This document shows, one piece after another, positions 1-63,285 of a DNA stretch of 64,000 nt (positions are counted from its first letter, which is position 1; every line of letters starts with the position of its first letter). Below the pieces are notes generated by a model. The model had not been told where the DNA came from. It was given only the letters and a program-made list of their open reading frames with translations, and searched no databases. Source of the DNA: Octopus sinensis (taxonomy: Eukaryota); contig NC_043000.1 in the NCBI RefSeq assembly GCF_006345805.1, forward strand, positions 93,000,001 through 93,064,000. Direction: 5' to 3'. The translations under genes were made by a program, and so were the position numbers.

Positions 1-62
1 ATTTCCAATATTTGTAGTATTGAAGGGGTATCATGTGTGTTGGGCTTATTATTTTGGGTAAA

Positions 63-891
63 ATAAAAGTGGCAGAATCGTTAGCGCACTAGACAAAATG
101 CTTAGCAGTATTTCGCCTGTTGCTACATTCTGGGTTCAAATTCTGCCAAGGTCGACTTTACTCTTCATCCTTTCGAGGTTGATAAAATAAGTACCAGTTG
201 AACATTGGGGATTGATGTAATCTCCTTCTAAATTGCTGCCCTTGTGGCAATATTTGAAACCATTATTTGGGGCAAAATAAGGTGATGAACTGGCAGAATT
301 GTTAACAAGCTGGGCAAACTACATAGTAGCATTTCATCCATCTTTATGTTCCGAGTTCAAATGCTACCGAGGTCAACTTTGCCTTTCATCCTTTCAGGGC
401 CAATAAAATAGGTACCATTTGAACATTAGATTTGATATATTGACTTATCCTCTTCCCTGAAAACGCTAGCCTCAAGCAAGAATTTGTAATTATTATTTTG
501 GGTAATGTGAAAGCGGTGAACTGAGAAAATCATTAGCATGCTTAGCGGTATTTCGTGTCTTTACATTCTGAGTTCAAATTTCTGCCTAGGTTAACTTTAC
601 CTTTCATTCTTTCAGGGTCAATAAATTAAGTACCAGTTGCACACTGAAGTAAATTTAATTGACTGGCCCCCTCCCCCAAAATTTCGGTCCTTGTGCCTAG
701 AGTAGAAAAGTATCGCTAGCATGTCAGGCAAAATACTTTGCAGTATTTCGTCTATCTTTATTTTCTAAGTTCAAATTCCACCAAGGTCAACTTGCCTTTC
801 ATCCTTTAGGGGTCGATAAATTAAGTACCAGTTGCGTACTGGGGTCGATCTAAGTGACTGGCTCCCTCCCACCGAATTTCAGGCCTTGTGC
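63..891 (+). mobile_element. Head-to-tail array of four tRNA-derived SINE family B copies (~63-268, 281-495, 512-712, 713-891; last copy interrupted)
   Basis: Each copy has TGGCAGAATCGTTAGC, TTCTGAGTTCAAAT, CTTTCATCCTTTCGGGGTCGATAAA and AAGTACCAGTT motifs; several junctions carry TTATTTTGGG. Confidence 0.9.
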
Positions 892-1096
892 TAAATTTGA
901 AAAACCAGAGAGGACGGTAAATGGTAAAATCCGAGTTACAGTCAAAGTTGCTGGTAAAGGTGTTTATAATGGTGTTGGACGGAATTATCGCATTGCAAAG
1001 AGTGCTGCTGCCAAAAAAGCTTTGAGAATCCTTAAAACTATGCAGTCTCAGGGCTTCATTGCTCAACTGTCAAATGAAAGGATGATGCAAGGATAA
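890..1096 (+). pseudogene. DICER1: Dicer-1 C-terminal dsRBD and stop codon; probable 5'-truncated processed retrocopy
   Basis: [49 protein letters not shown] aligns by eye with the human Dicer C-terminus [49 protein letters not shown] (recalled); frame intact to TAA at 1094-1096. Identity is high confidence; pseudogene status is inferred from the split SINE. Confidence 0.85.
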
Positions 1097-1402
1097 CCTG
1101 AATAGATTGCTAATCAAGGTACATCTGTGATTCCATAATCAGCCATGCGTATCACGGCATGGCTGCAGATCATTGTTTCAACTACTTGGCACTGAGTGTA
1201 TGTGTATATATTTGCTTAATTTGTGTGTGTGTGTGGTGGAGAGTTTGGGTGCATGAGAGAGAGAGAGAGAAACAAAGTTTAATTTGTATGTAAGAAGTAA
1301 TCAAGGTTTAATGTCAGATAATGAGTAGTAAGTGTGTTTATGATATAATAATTATTTTTAATTTATGAGTGAATCTTTGCATTTTTCTGGGTAATGACAT
1401 GG

Positions 1403-1514
1403 GACGTTGGTAATGATCATGCTCGAGTGGTGCCCTTTTACGTGCCACAGGTACTGGCTTCCGTACCTATGGCATGTAAAAGGGCGCCATTCGAGCGTGA
1501 TCATTACCAACGTC
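1403..1514. repeat. 52-bp inverted repeat with 8-nt loop
   Basis: 1403-1454 pairs with 1463-1514: 47 Watson-Crick, 4 G:U, 1 C-A mismatch on the + strand. Confidence 0.95.
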
Positions 1515-1782
1515 GCTTCACTGACACCTATGCCGGTGGCACATGTAAAAAGATTCGAGTGAGGTCATTGCCAGTACCGCCTGACTGCCCCCCCCCGTGC
1601 CGGTGGCACGTAAAAAGCACCCATTACACTCTCGGAGTGGTTGGCGTTAGGAAGGGCATCCAGCTGTAGAAACTCTGCCAGATCACGATTGGAGCCTGGT
1701 TCTCCAGCCCTCAGTCAAAATCGTCCAACCCATGCTAGCATGGAAAGCGGACTTTAAATGATGATGATGATGATGATGATGA
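1403..1782 (+). mobile_element. SINE-like family F element with (GAT)n tail and 5' fold-back
   Basis: GGCACGTAAAAAGCACC...GGAAGGGCATCCAGCTGTAGAAAC...CCATGCTAGCATGGAAAGCGG then (GAT)n; same organisation at 53505-53810 and 45620-45995. Confidence 0.85.
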
Positions 1783-1783
1783 T

Positions 1784-1892
1784 GTGCCTAGAGTAGAATG
1801 GATTATTTTGGGTAAGGTGGCAAGCTGGCAGAATTGTTAGCCTGCCAGGATAAATGCTTAACGGTATTTCGACCATCCTTACATTCTGAGTT
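1784..1892 (+). mobile_element. Displaced 3' tail of the interrupted family B SINE (1784-1806) plus head fragment of another copy
   Basis: GTGCCTAGAGTAGAA matches the tail of the copy at 693-707; then GGTGGCAAGCTGGCAGAATTGTTAGC. Confidence 0.8.
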
Positions 1893-2039
1893 AAATCCAG
1901 TTAGATCAGATATCCTTTATGTAAATCCATGATCAGAAAGGATGGTTAGGTAAAACATCATGGTGAGAGAGAAGAAAAGAATGATTATGCAGTACATTCT
2001 CAGCTCATTACCTTTCAGTGCCTATTAATAAGGGTTTCA

Positions 2040-2225
2040 AAATTTGGCACAAGGCCAGCATTTTTTGCCACAAGTACAGTGTCTAATTTCCTTCAGTTTC
2101 TGGTTACCAAATCCATTCACAAGGTTTTCGTCAACCCATGGCTATAGTAGAACACACTTGCCTAAGGAGCCACACCATGGAACTGAACCCAGAAACATGT
2201 CATTGAGCAGTGAACTTCCTAGTCT
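2040..2225 (-). mobile_element. SINE family A, 5' half
   Basis: TCAGTTTC..ACCAAATCCATTCACAAGG..CTATAGTAGAACACACTTGCC. Confidence 0.75.
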
Positions 2226-2280
2226 TACAATGAAACCTGTGCTTTATTTTCAATTCAAATACAGGTGACAAGATATTTTT

Positions 2281-2672
2281 TTCTACACTAGGCACAAGGA
2301 CCAAAATTTCGGGGGAGGGGGCTAATCAATTAGATCGACCCCAGTATGCAACTGGTACTTAATCTATCAACCCCGAAAGGATGAAAGGCAAAGTTGACCT
2401 TGGTGGAATTTGAACTCAGAACATAAAGACAGACAAAATACCTATTTCTTTACTACCCACAAGGGGTTAAACACAGTGAGGACAAACAAGGACAGACAAA
2501 CAGATTAAGTCGATTTTATCAACCCCAGTGCGTAACTGGTACTTATTTAATCGACCCCGAAAGGATGAAAGGCAAAGTTGACCTTGGTAGAATTTGAACT
2601 CAGAATGTAGTGACAGAAGAAATACCGCTAAGCATTTCACCTGGCATATTAATGTTTCTGCCAGCTTGACAC
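2281..2672 (-). mobile_element. SINE family B dimer with target-site duplication
   Basis: Two bodies in tandem flanked by ACAGG(T/C)GACAAGATATT. Confidence 0.85.
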
Positions 2673-2829
2673 CTCACAGGCGACAAGATATTAAAACAGC
2701 TATTATCATATATACCGTATGAAATATTTAAACTCCAATTAAACTCAAACTTTCAAGTTATCCTCAACAGATGATTGCTTCTACCCACAAAACTGAAAAA
2801 AAGAAACAGTAGACTATTCGAACAAATAC

Positions 2830-2952
2830 ATACTTACATATATGATATATATGCATGTATGCATGTATGTATGTATGTATGTATGTAAGTATGTATGTAT
2901 GTATGCAAGCATGTATGTATGTATGCTTATGTATGTATATGTATGTATATAT

Positions 2953-3015
<63 letters not shown>

Positions 3016-3200
3016 TGCATGTGCATGTCTTTGTGTGTGTGTATATATATATATACATATATATATATATAGAGAGAGAGTTATATATATATATACATAT
3101 ACATATATATATATATATATATATACATATATGTATATATATATATACATATATATACATACACATTCACATACTCATATCAACATATACATATACATAA
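2830..3200. repeat. Compound microsatellite (TATG)n/(TA)n/(TG)n
   Basis: Direct inspection. Confidence 0.95.
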
Positions 3201-3879
3201 AATAATGGAATGACAGAATGATAGACAAGCTTAATGACACGTAAAGATTATAAACATTAATCTACATGGGTGAAGACATGATATGAATTTATACATTATT
3301 TTATGTGTGTGTGTGTGTGAGAGAGAAAGAGAGAGTATCTGTGCATGTGTACAAAAAATATACTACACACACACACATACACTCACATGCACACATATGC
3401 ACACAAATACATGTATTCAGGTATAAAGTCATTAATGCGATGAAAGAGGCATGCACAAAGTCCCGTCCCATAAATTACGCCTAAATATGAAATTCATTCA
3501 ACTGGAAAGATGTACTATGTTAAGGAAATGTAATGATTACATGTGCATCTATAAATAAGTAAACATATATATATATATTGCCGTTGAAACATTCCTGTCA
3601 CAACCTGGGACCTTGAAGACTGCTTTAATGCAAGAAAGTATACTAGTCCCTTAATATTTTATATTTTATATTCAATATTTCATCTATTCAATAAGACAAT
3701 CAATACTTCATTTCATTTTACTATATATACTATGTATACTATATATTCTATATTCTACATTAATATTATAAAGAATATAAATAAAGCATAAAAACAGACA
3801 GAGCTGGAATTCTTCTGAATAAAATTTTTAGAACCCATAAGTGACCCTAACTTTAATTAAATATCCTCTCTTTTTTCAG

Positions 3880-4255
3880 CCTCAACATAGAAGTTTTAAA
3901 TGTAGTGCAGTCAGTGGAAAGACATGTTGTTCTTGTCACCTTATCTACTAAGCATTGTAAAAGATTGAAACCTTCTTCAGTGTCACAAGATCCTCTGTGG
4001 TTAAGATCAGAAAAGAGCTCCTGGCCTTTGGTGAGAATGTGCCTCCTGTGGCTAAAAGAAAAGAAATGGTCTTGACAGTTAGACATGGTCAGAAGAGTCT
4101 AATTTTTTCAGTAAATCCGGGGCATCTTCATCAAGGAGCACAAGTCAATGAGGGTCATGTGTCAGTCAATGATTTGATGTGTAATGCATGAAGACATGAG
4201 GCACAAACTGTATTTTATGAGAAGAGGGCAGTTCATGTCTCATAAAATGTCTGGT
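3880..4255 (+). mobile_element. Decayed maT/DD37D-like transposase N-terminal fragment
   Basis: FFSVTRSSVVKIRKELLAFGENVPPVAKRK and, after a frameshift, EDMRHKLYFMRRGQFMS. Confidence 0.7.
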
Positions 4256-9334: not shown

Positions 9335-9840
9335 TTATTAAGAAGACCTGGCAAGTAAAGTGAGATCACAGCTGTAGCCTTTACCAGTGTCGCATAACCA
9401 GCCCATTTAAAATGTACCTTTGAATCGACAGGTGATATGCCATGCTTGAGGAGACTTATTAAGTCAAGTAAAATCAAAAATCAAAATCAAAATCACTATC
9501 AGAATCACAATCAAATGGAAATTGTAGTTGTGGATGACCACCTGACCAGCTCCCATGCTGGTGGCATGCAATAAGCACCATTCATGCATGGATTGACGCC
9601 AGTGCCACCTGATTGGCTCCCCATGCTGGTGGAACATAAAAAGCACTGTCCGAAAGTGGTCAAACTAGCCCTGCCAGCCCCAACCGATTCCTGTGCTGGT
9701 GGCTCATAAAAAACACCATCTGAGTATGGCTGATGCCAGTGCTGCCTGACTGGCTCCTGTGCCAGTGGAATGCAAAAAGCTCCGACTACACCCTCTGAGT
9801 GGTTGGTGTTAGGAAGGACATCCAGCTGTAGAAACCTTGC
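9335..9840 (+). mobile_element. Family F element, long form with internal tandem units
   Basis: Repeated CTGACTGGCTCC..GGTGG..AAAAAGCAC units, then GAGTGGTTGGTGTTAGGAAGGACATCCAGCTGTAGAAAC. Confidence 0.75.
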
Positions 9841-10650: not shown

Positions 10651-11419
10651 TATGTGTATTCTATGGGATTCTTACAGGTATTTGACTACCAAATCCAGTA
10701 ACAATTCTTTGGTCAACCTGAGACTATAGACGAGGACCCATGTCCCAAGTCCTACTCAGGGGGACTAAACCCAAAACCATGTGGGTTGGGAGGCAAACTT
10801 CTTAACCTTACAGGAATGCCCGGAAAATAAAATAAAATTAATTAAATGCAAATTCCTAGGTTTATACATGTGCACACATGTATGTGTATGTACATGTGTA
10901 TGTGTGTGTATGTGCACGCATGTGTGCATGTGCATGCATGTGTGAGTGTGTGCATGTGTGTGTGTGTGCATGCGCAATCAATTACTGGCTAGCATTATGA
11001 TTACTCCAGACACTATCCTGTTTTTGAAAAACTGTTTTATTACTCATGCATTCTTATAATTAACTTAAATGAATTTATGCTTCCTAATTATTAATTTATC
11101 AGAGTTATTAGAGTTGGCCAGCCATTTCAGACCCTCTATGAAATAGAAAGAAATAACATTTACAAACAAGAATACAGAAACGAAACCTCAACTCTCTCTG
11201 GTGGATTAGAATTTTATCTTCAACCGAGAGGTTACTAGTTATTTTAACATATTTGCTACCAAAACCAACATTAATCTACCATTAGAAGGGGGAAAACATC
11301 ACTAAGTGAATGTAGGTGGGAGAGCAAAAGTAAAATGCTTTATTTTATGATGAACGTCAAATAGAGAGGAAAACTACTCTCCATCAGGATAAGAGAAAAC
11401 TTGATGCGCAAATATAGAT

Positions 11420-11805
11420 GTAGGAGTAGCTGTGTGGTAAGTAGCTTGCTTACGAACTACATGGTTCCGGGTTCAGTCCCACTGTATGGCATCTTGGGCA
11501 AATGTCTTCTACTATAACCTCGGGCTGACCAAAACCTTGTGAGTGAATTTGGTAGACGGAAACTGAAAGAAGACCATCGTATATTTATGTGTGTGTGTGT
11601 GTGTGTGTGTGTATGTTTGTGTGTCTGTGTTTGTCCCCCCAATATCACTTGACAACCGATGCTGGTGTGTTGACGTCCCCGTAACTTAGTGGTTTGACAA
11701 AATTAGTCTTACAAAGAATAAGTCCTCGGGTTGATTTGCTCAACTAAAGGCAGTCCTCCAGCATGGCTGCAGTCAAATGACTGAAACAAGTAAAAGAGTA
11801 AAAGA
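11420..11805 (+). mobile_element. SINE family A, full length
   Basis: GGAGTAGCTGTGTGGTAAGTAGCTTGC ... GACTGAAACAAGTAAAAGAG. Confidence 0.9.
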
Positions 11806-12086
11806 GTACTACAGAAGTTAGTGAAAAGACATTGCAGAAACAAAAAAAATACCAATTCTAATTTTGGGTGGATAATTAACATTATTGTGGGAATGACCAT
11901 GGAATTTTAATTATGCAATAAAAGAGTTATAACAAAAACAGTAAATTTCAAAAAAAATTGGCTAACAAAATGATGCTAATAGAATTTCAACATAAAGACT
12001 CATCAAGGGCAAGGAAAACAGTGGAGAAAATTGCTTAAAATTCCAAGTATTAATGCCCGCTATTATTGGTGAATTGGTAGATTAAT

Positions 12087-12488
12087 CTTTTACTCTTTTA
12101 CTTGTTTCAGTCATTTGACTGTGCCCATGCTGCAGCACTGCCTTTAGTCGAGCAAATTGATCCCAGGACTTGTTGTTTGTAAGCCTAGTACTTATTCTAT
12201 CGGTCTCTTTTACTGAACGGCTAAATTACGGGAATGTAAACACACCTATATCAGTTGTCAAGCGATGTTGGGGGGACAAACACAGACACACAAACATATA
12301 CACACACATACACACATATATATACATATATACGACGTGCTTCTTTCAGTTTCTGTCTACTAAATCCACTCACTTTGGTCGGCCCGAGGCTATAGTAGAA
12401 GACACTTGCCCAAGGTGCCATGCAGTGGGACTGAACCCGGAACCATGTGGTTTGTAAGCAAGCTACTTACCACACAGCCACTCCTACA
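12087..12488 (-). mobile_element. SINE family A, full length
   Basis: Reverse complement of the same head and tail. Confidence 0.9.
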
Positions 12489-13004
12489 TGTTAGAATTTT
12501 GGTAAGAAGGTACTTTGTATTCTTTTGTTGAGAGACATGACACATTGGTTGCAAATAAGATTGGAACTTACAACCATACAAGTGCAAGTAATTATTATGT
12601 AACTAATTATTTCTAATATAGACACAGAGCAATAAATTTGAATAGGCTGGGTTAGTTGAATCTATTCACTTCTAGTATTGAAAAGTTATTATATGTAATT
12701 GACCACAAAAGGATGAAATATTAAAAAATTGATTTTAGTGGGATTTGAACTTGGTGCATGGAATATTGAATCCAGTGTGACATGACCTTCTTTGTAATAC
12801 CCTAATAAACACTGCCAAATTTTCACCTACCATTAGATAAATACTGATATAGTTTAGGTTTACATCGAAAAGCAACCTATCAGAAATTGGTTGATCAATT
12901 CTGAAAAGCTGACAAAAATGTTTAAAATATGAACAAATATTGGTATGTGTTTATCAAATTGTGTTGCAAGATTCTTGATGTGAAATTGTGTGTTGAAACA
13001 GATG

Positions 13005-16149: not shown

Positions 16150-16490
16150 CATGCTAGGGTCACATGAAAAGCACCCATACTAGTGCCACATAAAAAAAAA
16201 ACACTCATGCTAGTGCCATGTAATAAGCACTCATTGCAGTGCCATGTAGAAAAAGGTATTGTGCTGGCTCCATGTAAAATGCATGCATGCTCATGTAATA
16301 TAAAATGCAGCCATACCAGTGCCATGTAACAAGCAGCCGACATACTCTGTGAAGTGGTTGGTATTAGGAAGGGCATCCAGCCTTAGAAACCATGCCAAAA
16401 CAGATAAATAGAGCCTGGGCACCTCTCCAGCTGGTCAGCTCCAGTAAAACTGTCCACCATGGAGAACAGGCATTAAAAGATGGCAATAAC

Positions 16491-16521
<31 letters not shown>

Positions 16522-17015: not shown

Positions 17016-17449
17016 GTGACCCTAATATTTTTTTACATAATTGTTTTGTAATTTTAACTATATACTTCTATGCTTGATGTCACAAATACACAGTCCAATA
17101 TCTTATTGCTCCTATCATTTGTAATTATCTTGTCTTCATTCAAGTTTTCCTATGAAGATCACTTTCTAAATCTCCTACCATGCAGAAGCTTGCAGTCCCA
17201 TTGTTAATGCATTGAAACTGCAGTAACTTAGTAGCACATATGCAAACACACACACACATATACATATAGAATATAATTTTGATTTGGCCTTATGATTGCA
17301 TTAAATTCACAAATCTCTGTGGCATAGTCAATTTCCATTCCTAGTGAGACAGGTGCATTAAAATATACACAGTTAGACATAATTCTTATTAATAATTGTG
17401 TATATTTCAATGCTTGTGTCTTGCTAAGAATGGGAATTGACTGTTATAT

Positions 17450-17950
17450 TAAAGCCTGATGACGTTAACCTTATGACAAGTGACCAAGAATTTTAGCAGG
17501 CAATTTGCTGTGCTTGAGAAGACACATCAATCTAATTAAAATTGTAGTCATGGCCAGTGCTGATGGCATATAAAATACAATCATAGCAATGACAAAAGAC
17601 ATCCAATGCACTTTGTAGAGTGTTTGGCATTAGGGAGGGCATCCAGCTGTAGAAATGTAGCCCAAACAGATGACTGGAGCATGGTGCTGCTCTCTGGCTT
17701 ACCAGCTCTGGTTAAACCTATTTCTTTACTATCCACAAGGGGCTAAACACAGAGAGGACAAGCAAGGACAGACAAACGGATTAAGTCAATTACATCGACC
17801 CTAGTGCATAACTGGTACTTATTTAATTGACCCCGAAAGGATGAAAGGCAAAGTCGACCACAGCGGAATTTGAACTCAGAACGTAGCGGCAGACAAAATA
17901 CCACTAAGCATTTCGTCCAGCATGCTAACGATTCTGCCAGCTCGCCGCCA
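17450..17950. mobile_element. Family F fragment (+, 17450-17715) followed by family B SINE (-, 17718-17950)
   Basis: GGAGGGCATCCAGCTGTAGAAA; GAATTTGAACTCAGAACGTAGCGGCAGAC. Confidence 0.8.
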
Positions 17951-28239: not shown

Positions 28240-29350
28240 TCTGATTCCCAACAATATGTATCTTTGAACTTTCAGCTTTTCTTGTCTGCTAGAATTTGTT
28301 AGACTAATTCTCAATCTACCAAAAATCCACATTTGAAAGACTTCTGGTTTTTTACTCCATTGCTGTGTACATTGTCCAAATTTCAGCCCCAGAGATGACA
28401 ATTGGTATGATATAGGTTTTAGATGCAGTTTAACAGTTTAACAGTTTTAGTTTGACAGTTTTAATTTAACAGTTTTTACATGCAGTTTAACAGTTTAACA
28501 GTCTTAGTTTAACACTTCTAGATGCTATTTCAAAGTTTAATGGTTTTAGATGCACTTTAACAGCTTGACAATTTTAACAGTTGCAGTTTAACAGCTTCAG
28601 ATGCATGGTTAACTGTTTAACAGTTATAGTTTAAAATTTTTGGTGCAGTTTAACAGTTTGACAGTTTAACATTTTAACAGTTTTAGATGCAATTTAATGG
28701 TTTGACAGTTTAACAACTTTAGATTTAAAATTTTAGGTGCAGTTTAATAGTTTCGAAAACTGTTAAACTGCACCTAAAATATAGTGTTATTTTTTTCTTA
28801 TACATATTATTTAGACTTATTTTTTTCTCTGAGTAACTTCTTCACTGTAACCTTCTTTATTATTTCTCCGAAATACTTGAAGAGTTTTACTCGTTCAAGC
28901 TTCTGTCCATTTACCTTTTTGCTTTATCATACTATACTATTAACCATTTTCTTTGTTTTCCATTCACTTTTAGGCCTTTCCTATCACTTTGCTCTTTTGC
29001 AGCATCAAAAATTTCTTGTAGTTTCTCATTGCTATTTGTCAGTAATACTGTTATTATCAACATATATTGTTTATGTTCGCTCCATTGACTATGAGTCTTT
29101 TGGTTTCATCTGACTCTATGAATATGTTCTTACTATATGTATTAAATAGGTATAGTGATAACACCCCCACCCTGTCTTATACCTCTTTTGATCTCTGCTT
29201 GTTCTGACAATTCTTGTTCTATTTTAATGGCTACTGTTTTGTTCCAGTATAACACTCAAATGATTCTGATGCCCTTTCCTTCTAAGCCAGCTTTACCTAA
29301 AGCAGTGACGAGCTCCTTGTCGTATAAATGGTAAAACGCCTTGCCATAAT
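28240..29350 (-). mobile_element. Decayed RTE-clade reverse transcriptase fragment interrupted by a tandem array
   Basis: LYWNKTVAIKIEQELSEQAEIKRGIRQG; VNGANINNI plus degraded YADD; beyond the array IPIVISGAEIWT..QMWIFGRLRIS. Confidence 0.8.
28415..28781. repeat. Irregular (CAGTTTAA)-based minisatellite ending in a 24-bp hairpin
   Basis: About nine AGATGCAGTTT-like anchors with variable 8-mer modules; hairpin 28731-28754 / 28758-28781. Confidence 0.9.
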
Positions 29351-31077: not shown

Positions 31078-31260
31078 TATATATAATATTATTTCATAAG
31101 CACAATATATATTTTTATGAGCTACCATTAGTTTCATGTCATGAAAACAGCTCAGACAACATTTTAAACATACCTGGTGGCTTCACACAATCCTCAGGCT
31201 GTGCCCACATGGCATAGCAAGCTAAAAACAGGACGATAGGATATATATATATATATAAAA

Positions 31261-31422
31261 CCAGTCCTGTGTGTGTATATATGCGTGTGTGACTATCTCT
31301 CTGCTTCTCTCTCTCTATCTATCTATCTATCTGTCTATATATACACACACACACACATACATATATATATATACACACACACACCTATATATATATATAT
31401 AAATATATACATACGTATAAAA

Positions 31423-31461
<39 letters not shown>

Positions 31462-31470
31462 TAGATAGAT

Positions 31471-31541
<71 letters not shown>

Positions 31542-31596
31542 TAGAGAGAGAAGCAGAGAGATAGTCACACACACATATACACACATAGGACTGGCT
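31261..31596. repeat. Fold-back duplication around a microsatellite core
   Basis: CCAGTCC..GACTATCTCTCTGCTTCTCTCTC vs GAGAGAAGCAGAGAGATAGTC..GGACTGG. Confidence 0.85.
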
Positions 31597-32349
31597 TTTT
31601 ATTAGTTTCTGGCTACCAGTTTCCACTTGCAACTTATAGGTCAGCCAGCAGTTATAGCAGAAACCACTTGCCCCATGTGCCATGCAGCCATGCTGTGAGA
31701 CCAAACTTAGCACCACACAGATGCAAAGCAAACTTTGTAACCACAATATATGTAAAGCATAATAAAATCAGATATATACGGTAATTTTCATTCAATGAGT
31801 TGATGTGCAAAATATAAGATGTATATGGTGGGGTTTCGATTTCAGAATTTATGGCTACAAAACTTCCAGAGTGAAATCTCACATTGATCGCTCTCCTCCT
31901 TCTAAAAGCTATTAAATAAAGAGTCAGGAATCTATAAGAAATGGACTTAGTTGACAATTAATTTTACAGCCACAAATGTAAAAATAATATGAATAAAGTT
32001 TATCAATCAGTTCTAAACTTGAGATTTTCTTATAAAAACATACTATGTAAAGAAATGCTAATTAAAGGAGTTGAAATATTCTAACATTATTATTAATTCA
32101 GCAATTATTCATCATCATAGATAGGGAGATTCATTAAAATTCAGAAATCGAGCCGCAATTTGCTATCAAATGTAAATTAAATCGTTTTCCCATTGTTTAC
32201 AGATAGAAATATGTAGGAAAATCAAGAATTAGAGAATCTCAAAGAATGTCAAATGTAAAGTTAAGTTAGTTAAGAGTTTGAGAATAAATTTAGAAAAGAT
32301 TACTTAGAAATAATAAATATATTGATAAATTTTCCTATTTCTCGTTACA

Positions 32350-45520: not shown

Positions 45521-45619
45521 TAAATGATTAGATACAGAAGAGACACATCAGGTCATCCCATAAGTTCTGTCTTTTTAAAAATTGAATGAAATTTAATAGT
45601 ATTTCAGAATGTCTAATCA

Positions 45620-45995
45620 TCATCACCATCGATTAACGTCTGCTTTCCATGCTAGCATGGGTTGGACGATTTGACGGAGGACTGGCGAACCAGATGGCTG
45701 CACCAGGCTTCAATCTGATCTGGCAGAGTTTCTACAGGTAGATGCCCTTCCTAACGCCAACCACTCTGGGAGTGTAGTGGGTGCTTTTACGTGGTACCAG
45801 CACGAGGGCCAGTCTGGCGGTAGTGGCAACGGCCACACTCGAAATGGTAATTTTTACATGCCACCTGCACAGAAGTCAATCCAGCGCCACTGGCAATGAC
45901 CTCGCTCGAATGTTTTGTTCATGTGCCACCAGCACATGCGCCAGTAAGGCAACTCTCGTAATGATCATGCTCAAATGGAGCTTTTTATGTGCCAT
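45620..45995 (-). mobile_element. Family F element
   Basis: CATC(ATC)..TTTCCATGCTAGCATGG..GATGCCCTTCCTAACGCC. Confidence 0.85.
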
Positions 45996-53082: not shown

Positions 53083-53504
53083 TATGTATATATGCAGATT
53101 TGTATGCTTTGTTTTATGTATATATTCATGTATTCTCATGCTTATACAGTAATCACTCACCATATTGCAGTTCATCTATCGCACCCTCAGTACATTGCGA
53201 ATTTTTTTGACTAATATATGTAAATTTATATCATGGTCTCCTCAGTATATTGAGGGTTTCTGTGGCCGATAGGTATTTATATTTTTCAGATTTTAATTAT
53301 TTCTGTGGTAAAATATGTATTTTCATGCCTAAAAATTATACTGCACTATATAACACATTAATTAAAATATATTAAAAGAAAATACGTAGGGTACCATAGA
53401 TGAGTAAGCAAAGAATTGCAAATACTGTATGGAAAACAAAACTCATGGGGTGAGTGTGTGGTGTTGTTTTGCATTTATAATAAAACAAATATATACAAAT
53501 TATA

Positions 53505-53810
53505 GGAAGGTCATTGCCAGAGCCGCTGGACTGGCTCCTGTACAGGTGGCACATAAAAAGCACCATTTGAGCATGGCCGCTGCCAGTACCGCCTGACTGG
53601 CCCTCATGCTGGTGGTACGTAAAAGCACCCACTACACTCTCGGAGTGGTTGGTGTTAGGAAGGGCATCCAGCTGTAGAAACTCTGCCTGATCAGATTGGA
53701 GTCTGGTGCAGCCATCTGGTTCGCCAGACCTCAGTCAAATCATCCAGCCCATGCTAGCATGGAAAGCAGACGTTAAACGATGATGATGATGATGATGATG
53801 ATGATGATAT
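53505..53810 (+). mobile_element. Family F element with (GAT)n tail
   Basis: Near-identical to 1515-1782. Confidence 0.9.
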
Positions 53811-55409: not shown

Positions 55410-55584
55410 ACGCTATCATACGTTAAATTCAACTTGCATTGAAAGTCAACAAAGCTTGCTTTAGAAGTGTTGAGATGTATTGAAAGATATAGATACGGAA
55501 ATAATTTTATTCTCAAATACAGGAAAATGCAAATAATATAGCATGAACGGGATAAACTATTCATATTTTGCAGAAAAATCTGTT

Positions 55585-55659
55585 GATGGCTGTCCATGAG
55601 ACTCAAACACACATCCCTGTGATTACACATCAAGTGCTTTACCATTAAGCTAAACTGAC
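55585..55659 (-). pseudogene. Degenerate tRNA-Thr(UGU)-like sequence (SINE head)
   Basis: Minus strand TAGCTTAATGGTAAAGC D-arm, TGTAA anticodon loop, degraded T-arm GTGTG-TTTGAGT-CTCAT. Confidence 0.55.
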
Positions 55660-55791
55660 CCAACAATAAATTCTTCGGCAAATTTAGGATATAGGAATCT
55701 AGCTTTATAAGGTGCTATCGTATGTTAAATTCAACTTACATTGAAAGTCAACAAAGTTTGCTTTAGAAGTGTTGAGATTTATTGTCGTTGG

Positions 55792-55866
55792 GTAAGTTTA
55801 GCTTAATGGTAAAGCAGTTAACATGTAATCAGAGGAATGTGAGTTTGAGTCTCATGGCTAGCTGCC
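55792..55866 (+). pseudogene. Degenerate tRNA-Thr(UGU)-like sequence (SINE head)
   Basis: D stem GCTT/AAGC, loop CATGTAA, T stem GTGAG/CTCAT; acceptor and anticodon stems imperfect. Confidence 0.6.
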
Positions 55867-56016
55867 AACAGATTTTTCTGCAAAATATGGATAGTTTATC
55901 CTGTTTATTATACTATTAGCATTATCCTGTGCTTGAGAGTAAAATTATTTCCTTATCTGTATCTTTCAATACATCTCAGCGCTTCTAAAGCAAACATATA
56001 TATATATATATATATA

Positions 56017-57090
56017 TTGTTGTATTTGGGGATGGTCATGTTGAAAACACACATGCTATATATTTGGTGTTCACTTGCTTCAGCTTTATTTTATATTGAT
56101 TTTATTTCGGCCAGAGTTCTTTCATCAGACTTCTGTGACCTCATCAGTAGTCCTTTGCTTTCTTCTTTCTTTTTTGTGTCTCTCCTTACTAATGATCTGC
56201 CATTTTTATTCCTGTAGCATGTGTCTTTATTTGCACATGCATATATCCCTGTGTGTCTTTATTTGCACATGTGTATATCCCTGTAAGTGTCTATGTTTAG
56301 TAAGTGTGTGTGTGTGGGAATCTGTATGGTACATGCATTATCAATATTCCCTGTTTATTCACTTTCGTTTGATTTACTTTTATTTTATTCATTTATTTTT
56401 AGCTACTTACTTTTCATTTCTTTCTTTTTTGTATTAATTTAATTTAATTTAATTTGTTAATGTATATAGTTATTTAATTCCATTTATTTATCTGTGTATT
56501 GTATTAGTTTCATATTATTATCAGTTTCTGTAGATCTTATTCTGTCATAGGTTGTGGTGTGTAGGGGATGTGTGTTAGTGTTCCATTCTTGTTTTCTATT
56601 TAGGCTAGATTTATTTTCTATTATGTATGTAGCTTCGGTAATTTGTCTAAGCGTTGTGTCTGTTCTATGTATAGACAAGATTTTAACTTCTATATTGTTT
56701 AGTGAGCCTCTGTGTTCCCACTCAGCATGCTGGTATAGAACTGATGTGCTCTTCTCTTCCTTAAGTTCCCTCCAATACTCATTTACCCGCTCTCCTATGC
56801 TCCATGCTGTCTCCCCTTTGTACATTGTTGTCTTGTTTCTGCACCATCCCTCTGTACATCTTATACTATACACTACATTCCTAACTTTACAGTTTGTTTG
56901 TGGGCTAAATCTACATACAATACAGTTCCTATCAGTACAGAAGGTACTACCAAAAGGTACTAATAGGAACTGTATTGTATGTCAAGTCCTTCCCTGTGGA
57001 CTGCGTGTTGTACCACTGCAGAACTACTGCACATACAGATAGTTCACACCGGCCCTTCCCTGAGAAAAGCTCTGTCCAAGAACAACACCT
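56017..57090 (-). mobile_element. Penelope-like element 3' part (GIY-YIG endonuclease + 3' terminus)
   Basis: CTDRNCIVC..CKVRNVVYSIRC..YKGETAWSIGERVNEY..LRQITEATYI..LNRKQEW. Confidence 0.85.
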
Positions 57091-58015: not shown

Positions 58016-58236
58016 CTTGTTCTATTTCTATTCCTGAGCACCATACTAATACATTTGTTTGTTTGTACTCCACCTGCCTTCGTCTTTTGTTTATTTTCGT
58101 AACCTTCCCGTTATATATATATATATATATTATATATATATATATATACACATATATATAGATCGTCTTTCAGGAGAAAGAGGCAGTCGTATATCTGTCA
58201 ATAGAATGGGTATATAATCCGAAGTGGCATTATATA

Positions 58237-58294
58237 TATCAATCACAGCTGATCATACCAACTTACTAATTGGTGAGATCAGCTGTGATGGATA
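58237..58294. other. 58-nt hairpin with 8-nt loop
   Basis: ATCACAGCTGATC/GATCAGCTGTGAT perfect 13 bp, extended by ACCAA/TTGGT and TATC/GATA. Confidence 0.85.
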
Positions 58295-59759
58295 AGTAAT
58301 ACTGTACACTTTGGATAACTTATTTTATGCTAAGCTATCAAAGGCAGACGTTCAAATCATTTAAAGTGATCTAAAGTAAAATTCTCCATCAAATATTTCC
58401 TGCTTAATAATGACAAAATTCCTTTACTTAAATTCTTGATAATACAAAGAATTAATTGAAACGAAACCGTGTATTTCAGCAGAAATATGATAACAAAAGT
58501 GTTAAATCATTTGCTTCACACCTTGTGATGAATAAAGACATGATTTACCAATTTGCTACACTGTCTTCCATTGGATATCATTTTAAATATATTCCATGCA
58601 CAGCATGTTGAACAACTGTTCAACACTGTTCAGTGCTCAGGTAATTTCTTTCTTTGAAGAGAAGCCTTAATCTTTGTTGGGTAATATCAGTTACATAATA
58701 CATGTGTTAACTGCAAAAGGTCATCAATTTGTCGAAGTTAAAATATCATAAAGACTTTAAGATGATTTAAACTTGCTTTATATTTGAACATATGTGTCAA
58801 AGTAATGATTTGTTATTGTATCCAAGTTAATTAGGAAACGAAATGCCAGCTGTAGAGGGAATGGTAGACTTTTTTCCTCAGTCTGGTTTGGCATTAACTC
58901 TTTTGATGTCAACCTGCCGAAATTTAATTCTTGTTCTGTAATGTAAACTCTAGTATTTTCAAAGTGATTGCATTTAAATGAAATACTTCCAGTGTATAAA
59001 TACAATGCATGCATGCTACGTGTATGTGTGTGTGTGTGTTTATGTATTTTTGTGCCTCCTTGTTTTGACATTGTAGGCTAGCTGTAAATGAACATCACCT
59101 TCATACATGCAGTGTCATTTGCTTACAATCCTCCATGAAAATATATCTGGTCACAAGGAAACGGGTAAGGGTTGGTGACAGGATGATGCTGATGATGATA
59201 ATGATGATGATGATGATGATGATGATTTCTGTTTCTTATTTTTGACTTTATCTAAACATGGAACTTTCTTGCTAATCATAATCTACAAGTTTATCTATGG
59301 AATCAGGTAATTCTTAAATTTTGGGCTTGAGTGATCAAGAGTCCAAAAGAGAATTAAATCCATTGTCACAGAAATGTATTGTTGCAAATGGAACGAGGAC
59401 GAAATTCTTGGCTTTAATCTCTTATCCATTTTGTTACTGTATTTCTGTTAATATACACAATGGCCTCTGCTTCAATTAATTTCAAAAACAATGAAGAATT
59501 TTGTAGAATAACTTTATCATTAAGCTGTTGTTTAGAACATTAATTAGCATGCAATTTTGAATCAAGCTTCTAATTTGAATAATCTTATTCCTTTTGTTGG
59601 ATGAAATGCACTACATGTGTTTCAATTAATTTTTTTAAATTTGATAACTATGTTATAATTAAACTGGGGTTTCAAACATAAGTTAGCATGAAACTTTGAT
59701 GGAAGATTTTCATTCATATCATTTTAAACAAGTAGTTAGCATTGTAGAATTGAGAGCAG

Positions 59760-59999: not shown

Positions 60000-60235
60000 A
60001 AGCCCAGTGAGGGCAGGTGCCCTACGTTGGTAACTAGTATGCTCTGTGAAATTGTTGGTACTAGGAAGGGCATCTTGCTGTAGAAACCATATCAAAACAG
60101 ACATTAGACTTGGTGCAGCCCTCTAGCTTGTTGCTTCATGTTGAACTACCCAACCTATAGAGGCATGGAAATTGGGATGCTAAATGATGATGATGCTGCT
60201 GCTACTGTTGATGATGATGATGACTATGATGATGT
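60000..60235 (+). mobile_element. Family F fragment with (GAT)n tail
   Basis: GGAAGGGCATCTTGCTGTAGAAAC. Confidence 0.7.
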
Positions 60236-62229: not shown

Positions 62230-63285
62230 CTTGTTCACTGGTCATGCTTCAAGAACCCTGCAAAGAATTCTTGTAATTCCAAGCAAAGCTGATCTTTCTA
62301 TGCGTCCTACTTTCACACTTGCACCAGTCTTTTCCAGCGATGTTGGTACATGAGTGCTGATACTTCCAAGTGCACCAATTACCATTGGTATCATCTCTAC
62401 TCTCCTCATTGACCACAACCTTTGTATTTCCCACTTTAAATCATCATTGTTTATTTTTTCTTCTGTTACATTGATGCTGTTGTCACTGGGACATGCTATG
62501 TCGATGATCATACATGTTCTTTCTTTTTTATTCACCGCAACAATGTCCCATTTCCGATGTCTGGTCAGGTGATTGCACTGGGTCATTGCATCCCACAGGA
62601 TTTTGCAATTCTCATTTTCAGTGACTCTTTCTGGAGTTTGCTCATACCATGTTTTTGCTCTTTGTAGGCCGTGCTTTCCACAGAGCTCCCAATGGATCAT
62701 TCTTGCCACATTGTCATGGCATCTTTTGTATTTGAATTATGCTAATTTCAGGCATTCACTAATGATGTGCTATACCACTTCAACTCTCTCACCACACATT
62801 CTGCATTTGTCGCTATCGGTAGTGTTGTCTATTCCACACTTCATATAATTGTTCCTTAATGCTTGTTCCTGAGCTGTGCATATGAGTGCTTCTGTCTCTA
62901 TCTTCAGGTCACAACCTCCTCATCCATAGCCACCGGTCCTCTGTATCTGTCTTGGTGTTCACATCTCTTGCAAACTGACCGTACATTATCCTTTCATTCC
63001 ATGCTTTTTCTTTTTTTTTTGTTCATTTCTTATTTAAATTTTTCTTTACTCATGCAATTTTCAGTTTTGATGATGCCGGCCTTCTTCGTGTGTTTCAACA
63101 GCGACTCCACAGTATTTTTTATATACCACCCTAAGCCATTTTCCTCTGCTTCGATACAGTCCTGGTAACTGATAAAACCTCTCCCACTCCTTCTTTTGGA
63201 CAAGTACAGTCTATTATTTTTTCAAATTTTCTTCCATTTCTCACCAAGTATTTTCTGTACACCTAGGGCAGAGAAGCTCATTGTA
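62230..63285 (-). mobile_element. Dong/R4-like LINE, 5'-truncated
   Basis: KCRMCGERVE..HIISEC; ARMIHWELCGKHGL; KILWD; CMIIDIACP; IPMVIGALG; SALLGITRILCRVL. Confidence 0.9.

What the first reader, a model, noticed from the sequence alone, without database searches (positions are those of the whole stretch)
1403..1514. 52-bp near-perfect hairpin in Dicer-derived 3' UTR: possible self-substrate
Seen: 52-bp stem (47 WC, 4 G:U, 1 mismatch) with an 8-nt loop, ~300 nt after the Dicer stop, with no AATAAA/ATTAAA in between. It is an inverted duplication of the family F 5' segment. Four of five arm differences still pair on the Dicer-sense strand, though CpG decay alone could explain this. Inference: if present in the parental Dicer mRNA or a transcribed retrocopy, it is a Dicer/Microprocessor/ADAR substrate that could give feedback control of Dicer, analogous to the DGCR8 mRNA hairpins, or endo-siRNAs.
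Basis: partly seen in the sequence, partly recalled or inferred. Interest (0 to 1): 0.8.

Follow-up and report, generated by a model that had tools for sequence, protein, structure and literature searches.

The report
Retroposon fold-back hairpin in dead Dicer retrocopy
The 52-bp hairpin is real, but it is an inverted duplication of the 5' end of a repeat element ("family F") carried inside a truncated, intron-less Dicer pseudogene fragment that inserted into another repeat, so at this locus it is an ordinary by-product of retrotransposition and not a demonstrated Dicer control element.

Summary
Arms 1403-1454 and 1463-1514 give 47 Watson-Crick pairs, 4 G:U and 1 C:A, with an 8-nt loop (dG -99 kcal/mol, z -16.6). 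The hairpin starts 305 nt after the Dicer stop, with no + strand AATAAA/ATTAAA in between.

The context decides the reading:
- Segment 892-1783 is one retrotransposed insertion. It holds the Dicer CDS tail, 305 nt of UTR-like unique sequence, the hairpin, and family F with its (GAT)8 tail.
- The insertion interrupts a tRNA-type SINE. The joined flanks restore that SINE, with a (T)GTGC target-site duplication.
- It lacks the phase-2 intron (FE|KPERT) seen in the other Dicer genes I could fetch.
- Its 3' end is the F tail, not poly(A).
- The palindrome axis lies at the 5' end of the F copy.
- The five arm differences are all transitions, three at CpG and spread over both arms. The 4:1 G:U bias has P = 0.19.

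The likeliest origin is a fold-back or twin-priming event when F inserted into the parental Dicer 3' UTR, followed by reverse transcription of spliced Dicer mRNA primed on the embedded F tail. A one-step template-switch chimera remains possible.

Nothing indicates function. At least four other complex-sequence hairpins and several larger palindromes lie in the same 64 kb. Molluscs, if this is one, reportedly lack an endo-siRNA pathway. The parental gene could not be reached.

The parts
715..891 (+). Left part of the tRNA-type SINE copy that hosts the insertion; ends ...CCTTGTGC
   Evidence: Aligns with intact SINE copies 538-707(+) and 2281-2441(-)
887..891 (.). Left target-site duplication (T)GTGC
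   Evidence: Same 4-5 nt recur at 1783/1784-1787; the joined flanks restore CCTTGTGCCTAGAGTAGAA
892..1097 (+). 5'-truncated Dicer coding tail: (A)KFEKPERT...MMQG*, C-terminal part of the dsRBD, stop 1095-1097. GC at 890-891 could belong to either the target or the Dicer sequence (microhomology).
   Evidence: Contiguous across the FE|KPERT intron position that is occupied in L001 and L002.
1098..1402 (+). 305 nt of unique, UTR-like sequence derived from the Dicer transcript; no canonical poly(A) signal
   Evidence: Unique in the window apart from microsatellite matches; no + strand AWTAAA
1403..1454 (+). Left arm: inverted copy of F positions 1463-1514
1455..1462 (+). Loop TGGCTTCC; it is F sequence (homologous to TGGCTCC(T) of other F subunits) and marks the 5' end of this F copy
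   Evidence: Alignment A1
1463..1514 (+). Right arm: 5'-most subunit of the family F copy (the GATCATTAC variant, also the first subunit of the F copy at 45995)
1455..1757 (+). Body of the family F retroposon copy: two ~67-nt subunits, then the core ...TTAGGAAGGGCATCCAGCTGTAGAAA...CATGCTAGCATGGAAAGCGGAC
   Evidence: Matches F copies at 9540-9835, 16150-16520, 45616-45995(-) and 53500-53805
1758..1783 (+). (GAT)8 tail of F; it is the 3' end of the whole insertion
   Evidence: Other F copies carry the same tail; it abuts the right target-site duplication
1784..1798 (+). Right target-site duplication GTGC followed by the resumed SINE 3' end CTAGAGTAGAA

Best explanation
The hairpin is a fold-back: a 52-nt inverted duplication of the 5' end of one copy of a non-LTR retroposon (family F, (GAT)n tail).

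Shown. The F copy and 511 nt of spliced Dicer mRNA sequence (the last 206 nt of CDS plus 305 nt of 3' UTR-like sequence) form a single insertion, 892-1783. That insertion landed inside a tRNA-type SINE with a 4-5 bp target-site duplication. Its reverse transcription started on the F (GAT)n tail. The locus is therefore a 5'-truncated, dead-on-arrival Dicer retrocopy fragment.

Inferred. (1) An F RNA inserted into the 3' UTR of the parental Dicer gene. When reverse transcriptase reached the 5' end of the F RNA, twin priming or snap-back duplicated the first 52 nt in inverted orientation. (2) Later, the partner LINE's reverse transcriptase primed on the embedded F tail of a spliced, long-3'-UTR Dicer mRNA. 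It copied through F, the hairpin and the UTR, and stopped within the dsRBD coding region. The 5' end joined the target at GC microhomology. (3) Since then the two arms have decayed independently by five transitions.

At this locus the hairpin has no function of its own. If it is read through in some transcript, it would behave like any other inverted-repeat transposon dsRNA, that is, as a likely ADAR target.
For: - Empty site: flanks 800-891 plus 1788-1812 join in register into the SINE 3' end CCTTGTGCCTAGAGTAGAA, as seen in intact copies at 689-707 and 2281-2299, with GTGC duplicated.
- Processed origin: Dicer homology runs contiguously from AKFE through KPERT (tblastn 890-1060). L001 and L002 have an intron between FE and KPERT. 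P0002, P0003, P0004, P0006 and P0022 read R or S (AG+N) at that point.
- Truncation: only Dicer_dsRBD profile positions 35-89 of 89 are present, and nothing else Dicer-like is in the window.
- 3' end: the canonical F end ...GGAAAGCGGAC.TTAAA(GAT)n abuts the duplication directly. There is no poly(A) and no AWTAAA in 1098-1783.
- Fold-back at the F terminus: the loop and right arm are colinear with F subunits. The left arm stops matching F beyond 1403. The same GATCATTAC first-subunit variant begins the F copy at 45995 only 15 nt further in.
- Neutral decay: there are five differences, all transitions, three at CpG. Comparison with other F subunits polarises three of them: two changes in the right arm and one in the left. 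The other two are ambiguous CpG sites. G:U versus A:C is 4:1, P = 0.19.
- None of the four other F copies has the inverted arm.
- Comparable hairpins are frequent in the window.
Against: - The parental Dicer gene was not available, so steps (1) and (2) of the inferred history are untested.
- A single-event chimera would give the same final sequence.
- The target-site duplication is only 4-5 bp.
- Loss of the intron is judged from other, unnamed species, not from this organism's own Dicer gene.
- Textbook twin priming gives small junction duplications, not a 52-nt full duplication.
- Transcription of the retrocopy was not tested, so dsRNA-related activity at this locus cannot be excluded.
Confidence: 0.55

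Rival explanations
1. Single-event chimera. Reverse transcriptase copying a free F RNA reached its 5' end, snapped back on its own cDNA for 52 nt, then switched to an internal site of a spliced Dicer mRNA 3' UTR before integration. The hairpin was therefore never part of any Dicer mRNA.
For: The palindrome axis coincides with the F 5' terminus, which shows that an end of the F RNA template was involved. The whole unit has a single target-site duplication. Chimeric retrocopies made by template switching are known for L1 (general knowledge).
Against: It needs two consecutive jumps. The second jump would land on an internal, non-terminal position of the Dicer UTR, with no poly(A) and no poly(A) signal at 1402. 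End-to-end jumping normally lands on the 3' end of the acceptor (general knowledge).
Confidence: 0.28
2. The hairpin is a maintained element of the Dicer 3' UTR that is cleaved by Dicer or Drosha, or edited by ADAR, and gives feedback control of Dicer. The retrocopy merely preserves a snapshot of it.
For: The architecture suggests that a spliced Dicer transcript carried F and the hairpin. Four of the five arm differences keep pairing on the sense strand. A 52-bp duplex is long enough for ADAR or Dicer (general knowledge).
Against: The G:U excess is not significant (P = 0.19), and three of the five differences are at CpG. The copy examined is a pseudogene, so its arm changes say nothing about selection in the parent. 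The geometry is unlike a pri-miRNA (general knowledge), and no Rfam family matches. Molluscs reportedly lack DICER2, siAGO and endo-siRNAs. Transposon-derived hairpins are common in this region.
Confidence: 0.05
3. A DNA-level palindrome formed after insertion, for example by replication fork template switching or fold-back repair at the F 5' junction, unrelated to reverse transcription.
For: Short-loop inverted duplications can arise by replication template switching (general knowledge). Other palindromes lie in the window.
Against: The axis falls exactly at the canonical 5' end of F, and the duplicated segment is purely F. That is expected for an event at the end of an RNA template and would be a coincidence for a random replication error.
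Confidence: 0.08
4. This is the genuine terminal exon and 3' UTR of the functional Dicer gene, with the rest of the gene lying upstream of the window.
For: The 62-codon frame is open and ends in a stop codon. Only about 900 bp lie upstream in the window, so upstream exons could not be seen.
Against: Dicer homology starts abruptly inside a SINE, and the flanks re-join into an intact SINE with a target-site duplication. The conserved intron is missing. K and A replace the N and V that all ten retrieved homologues share in TVNVV.
Confidence: 0.02

Closest known systems
Processed pseudogenes whose formation is helped by a SINE embedded in the parent gene's 3' UTR (3'UTR-embedded Alu/B1; PMC5199112, abstract only)
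   Same: A spliced mRNA is reverse-transcribed by LINE machinery, and a SINE in the 3' UTR is part of the template. The product is intron-less, 5'-truncated and flanked by a target-site duplication.
   Different: Here the copy ends at the SINE's own (GAT)n tail instead of the mRNA poly(A). This implies internal priming on a tail-specific ('stringent'-type) retroposon. That the parent UTR contains F is inferred, not shown.
Twin-priming 5' inversions of L1 insertions
   Same: An inverted 5' segment is joined to a direct 3' segment of the same element, created during target-primed reverse transcription.
   Different: The inverted piece here completely duplicates the first 52 nt, giving a tight hairpin. 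Textbook twin priming inverts a more 5' segment with a small junction duplication or deletion. Snap-back self-priming of the cDNA is an equally good description.
Inverted-repeat SINEs (IRAlus) in 3' UTRs as ADAR/Staufen/Dicer substrates (PMC526178 and PMC7668262, listed; abstracts only)
   Same: Transposon-derived intramolecular dsRNA in a 3' UTR. If transcribed, this hairpin would be expected to behave in the same way.
   Different: IRAlus are two separate ~300-nt insertions with long loops. This is a 52-bp self-duplication of one element with an 8-nt loop. No editing or processing data exist for it.
DGCR8 mRNA hairpins cleaved by Microprocessor
   Same: The concept only: a hairpin in the mRNA of an RNA-processing factor.
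   Different: The DGCR8 hairpins are pri-miRNA-like, conserved, and lie in the 5' UTR and CDS (general knowledge). This one is a perfect 52-bp transposon fold-back, seen only in a pseudogene copy. Its conservation is untestable here, and no Rfam family matches it.

Membership tests
LINE-mediated processed (retro)pseudogene | Lacks the introns of the parent gene | tested here: met
   The FE|KPERT phase-2 intron is present in L001 and L002 and implied in five further homologues. The window is contiguous across it. Only this one intron position could be tested, and only against other species.
LINE-mediated processed (retro)pseudogene | Insertion flanked by a target-site duplication; the empty site can be reconstructed | tested here: met
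   The joined flanks restore the SINE 3' end, and (T)GTGC is duplicated.
LINE-mediated processed (retro)pseudogene | 3' poly(A) tail preceded by the mRNA's poly(A) signal | tested here: not met
   The insertion ends in the (GAT)8 tail of family F. There is no poly(A) and no AWTAAA in 1098-1783. It is therefore a variant primed on a retroposon tail.
Non-LTR retroposon / SINE-like family F | Dispersed multi-copy family with a shared body and a 3' simple-repeat tail | tested here: met
   Five copies lie in the window with the same core and a (GAT)n tail. Two further elements share only the core and the tail.
Non-LTR retroposon / SINE-like family F | Internal Pol III promoter or small-RNA-derived head | tested here: inconclusive
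   No tRNA and no Rfam match in 1-4000. The head consists of ~67-nt tandem subunits. F could instead be the 3' part of a LINE.
pri-miRNA / Microprocessor substrate (DGCR8-type hairpin) | Stem of about 35 bp with internal mismatches, a larger apical loop, and a match to a known family | tested here: not met
   The stem is 52 bp and almost perfect, and the loop is 8 nt. The only Rfam hit is mir-1 at E = 0.4 and 21.8 bits, against a gathering score of 45.6. The expected geometry is from general knowledge.
pri-miRNA / Microprocessor substrate (DGCR8-type hairpin) | Conservation across species and mapped small RNAs | not testable with these tools
   No orthologous or parental locus could be retrieved, and no small-RNA data were available.
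hpRNA / endo-siRNA locus | The host has a dedicated siRNA pathway and produces 21-nt duplexes from the hairpin | not testable with these tools
   The literature reports no DICER2, siAGO or endo-siRNA signature in molluscs, including O. bimaculoides. The taxon of the window is only inferred, and no read data were available.
Twin-priming / snap-back 5' inversion | Inverted segment of the same element at its 5' end, with the axis at the end of the RNA template | tested here: met
   Alignment A1: the loop and right arm are colinear F, and the left arm is their reverse complement. The F copy at 45995 starts within 15 nt of the axis.
Twin-priming / snap-back 5' inversion | Outer end of the inverted segment abuts the target-site duplication of that element's own insertion | not testable with these tools
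   This needs the parental Dicer 3' UTR, because the downstream duplicate would lie beyond the (GAT)n tail and is not part of the retrocopy.

The most novel reading that the evidence does not exclude
The living parental Dicer gene of this animal still expresses a long 3' UTR isoform carrying the F-derived ~52-bp hairpin. That hairpin is cut by Dicer or Drosha, or hyper-edited by ADAR, so that Dicer dosage is tied to dsRNA-processing activity. The retrocopy would be a fossil showing that such hairpin-bearing spliced mRNA existed in the germ line.
Probability: 0.05. Interest if true: 0.7.

Novelty: new member of a known kind. Interest (0 to 1): 0.2.

Why it matters
As it stands, the main value is as a correction. 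A striking hairpin beside a Dicer reading frame is the fold-back end of a repeat element inside a dead retrocopy, in a genome region where such hairpins are common. There are two modest points of interest.

- The composite shows an mRNA retrocopy that ends in a retroposon's microsatellite tail instead of poly(A). This is evidence that the tail-specific LINE machinery of this genome can also copy host mRNA sequence.
- It suggests that at some time a spliced Dicer mRNA carried this element in its 3' UTR. That prediction can be checked with one BLAST search against the genome assembly, plus the long-read and small-RNA data that exist for octopus. Only if the check succeeds would the feedback idea deserve experiments.

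Tried and rejected
1. Parental or orthologous Dicer locus.
- The protein search with the 62-aa tail gave only exon-sized hits at 83% identity or less, from unnamed sources.
- Exact look-ups of three window ORFs found nothing on record.
- The F core 23-mer and a pattern specific to the hairpin arm found nothing in metagenome contigs or genome contigs.
- The two Dicer loci I could fetch (L001, L002) share only coding similarity with the window, with no 3' UTR similarity. They served only to place the intron.

2. Naming the repeat families from the literature.
- Sequence-string searches found no paper.
- The cephalopod assignment rests on my recollection of octopus-like SINEs and base composition, not on a test.

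3. Rfam and tRNA scans of 1-4000.
- Nothing real for the hairpin. The mir-297-like hits at 2820-3400 are microsatellite artefacts below the gathering score.

4. Rejected readings.
- An independent MITE-like palindrome: the arms are F sequence colinear with the F body, and there is no second copy.
- Selection for pairing: P = 0.19.
- Genuine terminal exon: excluded by the empty site and the missing intron.

5. Dating the fold-back.
- Comparing the F body with a family consensus was not feasible. The four other window copies are only 72-82% identical to this copy.

6. Pfam on five other long ORFs gave no hits, so no host gene was identified around the locus.

Full report
**Observation**

The hairpin exists as described.
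- The repeat finder reports arms 1403-1454 and 1463-1514, 52 nt each, 8 nt apart and 90% complementary.
- As + strand RNA the stem is continuous. It has 47 Watson-Crick pairs, four G:U and one C:A. MFE is -99.3 kcal/mol, against -36.8 +/- 3.8 for shuffles (z -16.6).
- The minus strand folds less well (-85.9), because the four wobbles become A:C mismatches.
- The Dicer-like frame 908-1097 ends with a stop at 1095-1097, so the hairpin begins 305 nt downstream.
- No + strand AATAAA/ATTAAA occurs between 1097 and 2690.

**What the Dicer sequence is**

Pfam assigns the ORF to Dicer_dsRBD (E 1e-24), but only profile positions 35-89 of 89 are present. tblastn with a two-exon Dicer C-terminus from another animal (L001) aligns contiguously from AKFEKPERT at 890 to 1060. 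Nothing else Dicer-like is found in the 64 kb.

In L001 the codon for E in FE|KPERT is split by an intron of about 760 nt. L002 shows the same acceptor. In five further homologues the residue before KPERT reads R or S, which is the AG of an acceptor plus one base. The window lacks this intron, so its Dicer sequence derives from spliced mRNA.

**Evidence that it is an insertion**

Upstream of 892 lies a tRNA-type SINE that stops at ...CCTTGTGC. Downstream of the (GAT)8 run the sequence resumes GTGC-CTAGAGTAGAA. Joining 800-891 to 1788-1812 gives a sequence that aligns through the junction with intact SINE copies at 538-707 and 2281-2441 (87.6% over 161 nt). It restores the motif CCTTGTGCCTAGAGTAGAA seen at 689-707 and 2281-2299.

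So 892-1783 is one insertion with a 4-5 bp target-site duplication. It contains, in order:
- 206 nt of Dicer CDS.
- 305 nt that are unique in the window apart from microsatellite matches.
- The left arm and the loop.
- A family F element ending in its canonical ...GGAAAGCGGAC.TTAAA(GAT)n terminus.

There is no poly(A) and no poly(A) signal. Reverse transcription therefore began on the F tail. This is the genuine-gene reading's main problem: a real terminal exon cannot be an insertion inside a SINE.

**What the hairpin is**

Family F has at least five copies in the window (1455-1783, 9540-9835, 16150-16520, 45616-45995 on the minus strand, and 53500-53805). Each consists of ~67-nt tandem subunits, a conserved core and a (GAT)n tail.

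Alignment A1 shows three things:
- The loop TGGCTTCC and the right arm are colinear F subunit sequence.
- The left arm is their reverse complement and stops matching F beyond 1403.
- The first-subunit variant (GATCATTAC...) is also the first subunit of the copy at 45995, which starts only 15 nt further in.

The palindrome axis therefore sits at the 5' end of the F copy. This is the expected signature of reverse transcriptase reaching the end of an F RNA and then copying back, by snap-back or twin priming. None of the other F copies has an inverted arm.

**Arm differences**

All five differences are transitions, and three are CpG<->TpG/CpA. Comparison with other F subunits polarises three of them. 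The right arm changed at F positions 7 and 13, and the left arm at position 28. Positions 24 and 35 are ambiguous CpG sites. Both arms have therefore drifted.

Any transition in a stem gives G:U on one strand and A:C on the other. Seeing four or more of five on a named strand has P = 0.19. There is no sign of selection for pairing. In any case, this copy is a pseudogene.

**History**

Two histories fit the sequence.

(P) F inserted with a fold-back into the 3' UTR of the parental Dicer gene. Later, a spliced long-UTR Dicer mRNA was reverse-transcribed from the embedded F tail, truncated within the dsRBD coding region, and joined to the target at GC microhomology.

(C) A single event in which reverse transcriptase copied a free F RNA, snapped back for 52 nt, and then jumped to an internal site of a Dicer mRNA.

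I favour P, at roughly 0.55-0.6 against 0.3. C needs two jumps, the second onto a non-terminal acceptor position with no poly(A). P combines two known processes: 5' inversion during target-primed reverse transcription, and retrocopying of mRNAs that carry a SINE in the 3' UTR (PMC5199112). Tail-specific initiation by 'stringent' LINEs on simple-repeat tails is cited in PMC4758252. The parental gene would settle the question, but I could not retrieve it.

**Function**

Nothing supports a function at this locus.
- The stem is unlike a pri-miRNA (geometry from general knowledge), and no Rfam family matches. The only hit is mir-1 at E = 0.4, below the gathering score.
- Hairpins of this class are frequent here: 17324-17444 (stem of about 55 bp, -61 kcal/mol), 28730-28780 (24 bp perfect), 56913-56982 and 58217-58316. 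There are also large palindromes at 55456-55993 and 31253-31602.
- If the window is molluscan, two surveys report only DICER1, no siAGO and no endo-siRNA signature in molluscs, including O. bimaculoides (PMC11114477 and PMC12479628). I infer the taxon from octopus-like SINEs and base composition and could not verify it.
- ADAR editing of such a duplex, if it is transcribed, remains plausible but generic.

**Verdict**

The regulatory reading is unsupported, and its remaining plausibility depends entirely on the parental gene. I classify it as a new member of known kinds: a transposon fold-back hairpin, and a processed pseudogene primed on a retroposon tail. Interest is low. The one testable lead is whether the living Dicer 3' UTR carries F and the hairpin.

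Noticed in passing
window 17324-17444, 28730-28780, 56913-56982, 58217-58316: Four other complex-sequence hairpins. Stems run from about 24 to 55 bp and z-scores from -8.8 to -12. They may be MITE-like palindromic elements. None is derived from family F.
   Followed up: partly
window 55456-55993, 31253-31602, and 11418-11808 / 12083-12489: Two large palindromes (538 nt at 79% and 350 nt at 73%) and an inverted repeat with 412-nt arms at 82% separated by 274 nt. Their origin was not examined.
   Followed up: no
window 1-891, 1799-1900 and 2281-2680 (minus strand): A cluster of tRNA-type SINE copies arranged head-to-tail. Oppositely oriented copies lie about 1.5-2.3 kb away, forming long-range inverted repeats (arms 133-158 nt, 73-83% complementary).
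   Followed up: partly
window 17545-17700 and 60040-60235: Elements that share only the F core (TTAGGRAGGGCATC..GCTGTAGAAA), and at 60040-60235 also the (GAT)n tail, with different 5' parts. This suggests a superfamily built around a conserved central domain and one partner LINE.
   Followed up: no
window 1061-1097: The Dicer frame runs 12 codons ([10 protein letters not shown] plus stop) beyond the point where homologues such as P0001/L002 stop (...QSQGLLA*). This is either lineage-specific or a pseudogene change. The parental stop, and hence the true UTR offset, may differ by about 36 nt.
   Followed up: no
window 2820-3420: Hits to mir-297, mir-466 and mir-3149 at E down to 2e-8, all below gathering scores. 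They fall on (TATG)n/(TA)n microsatellite and are artefacts of low complexity.
   Followed up: yes
window 62242-62709 (-) and 56484-56873 (-): Open frames of 155 and 129 aa that look to me like remnants of transposon proteins. Pfam gave no hit at E <= 0.01, and the exact sequences are not on record in the contig index.
   Followed up: partly
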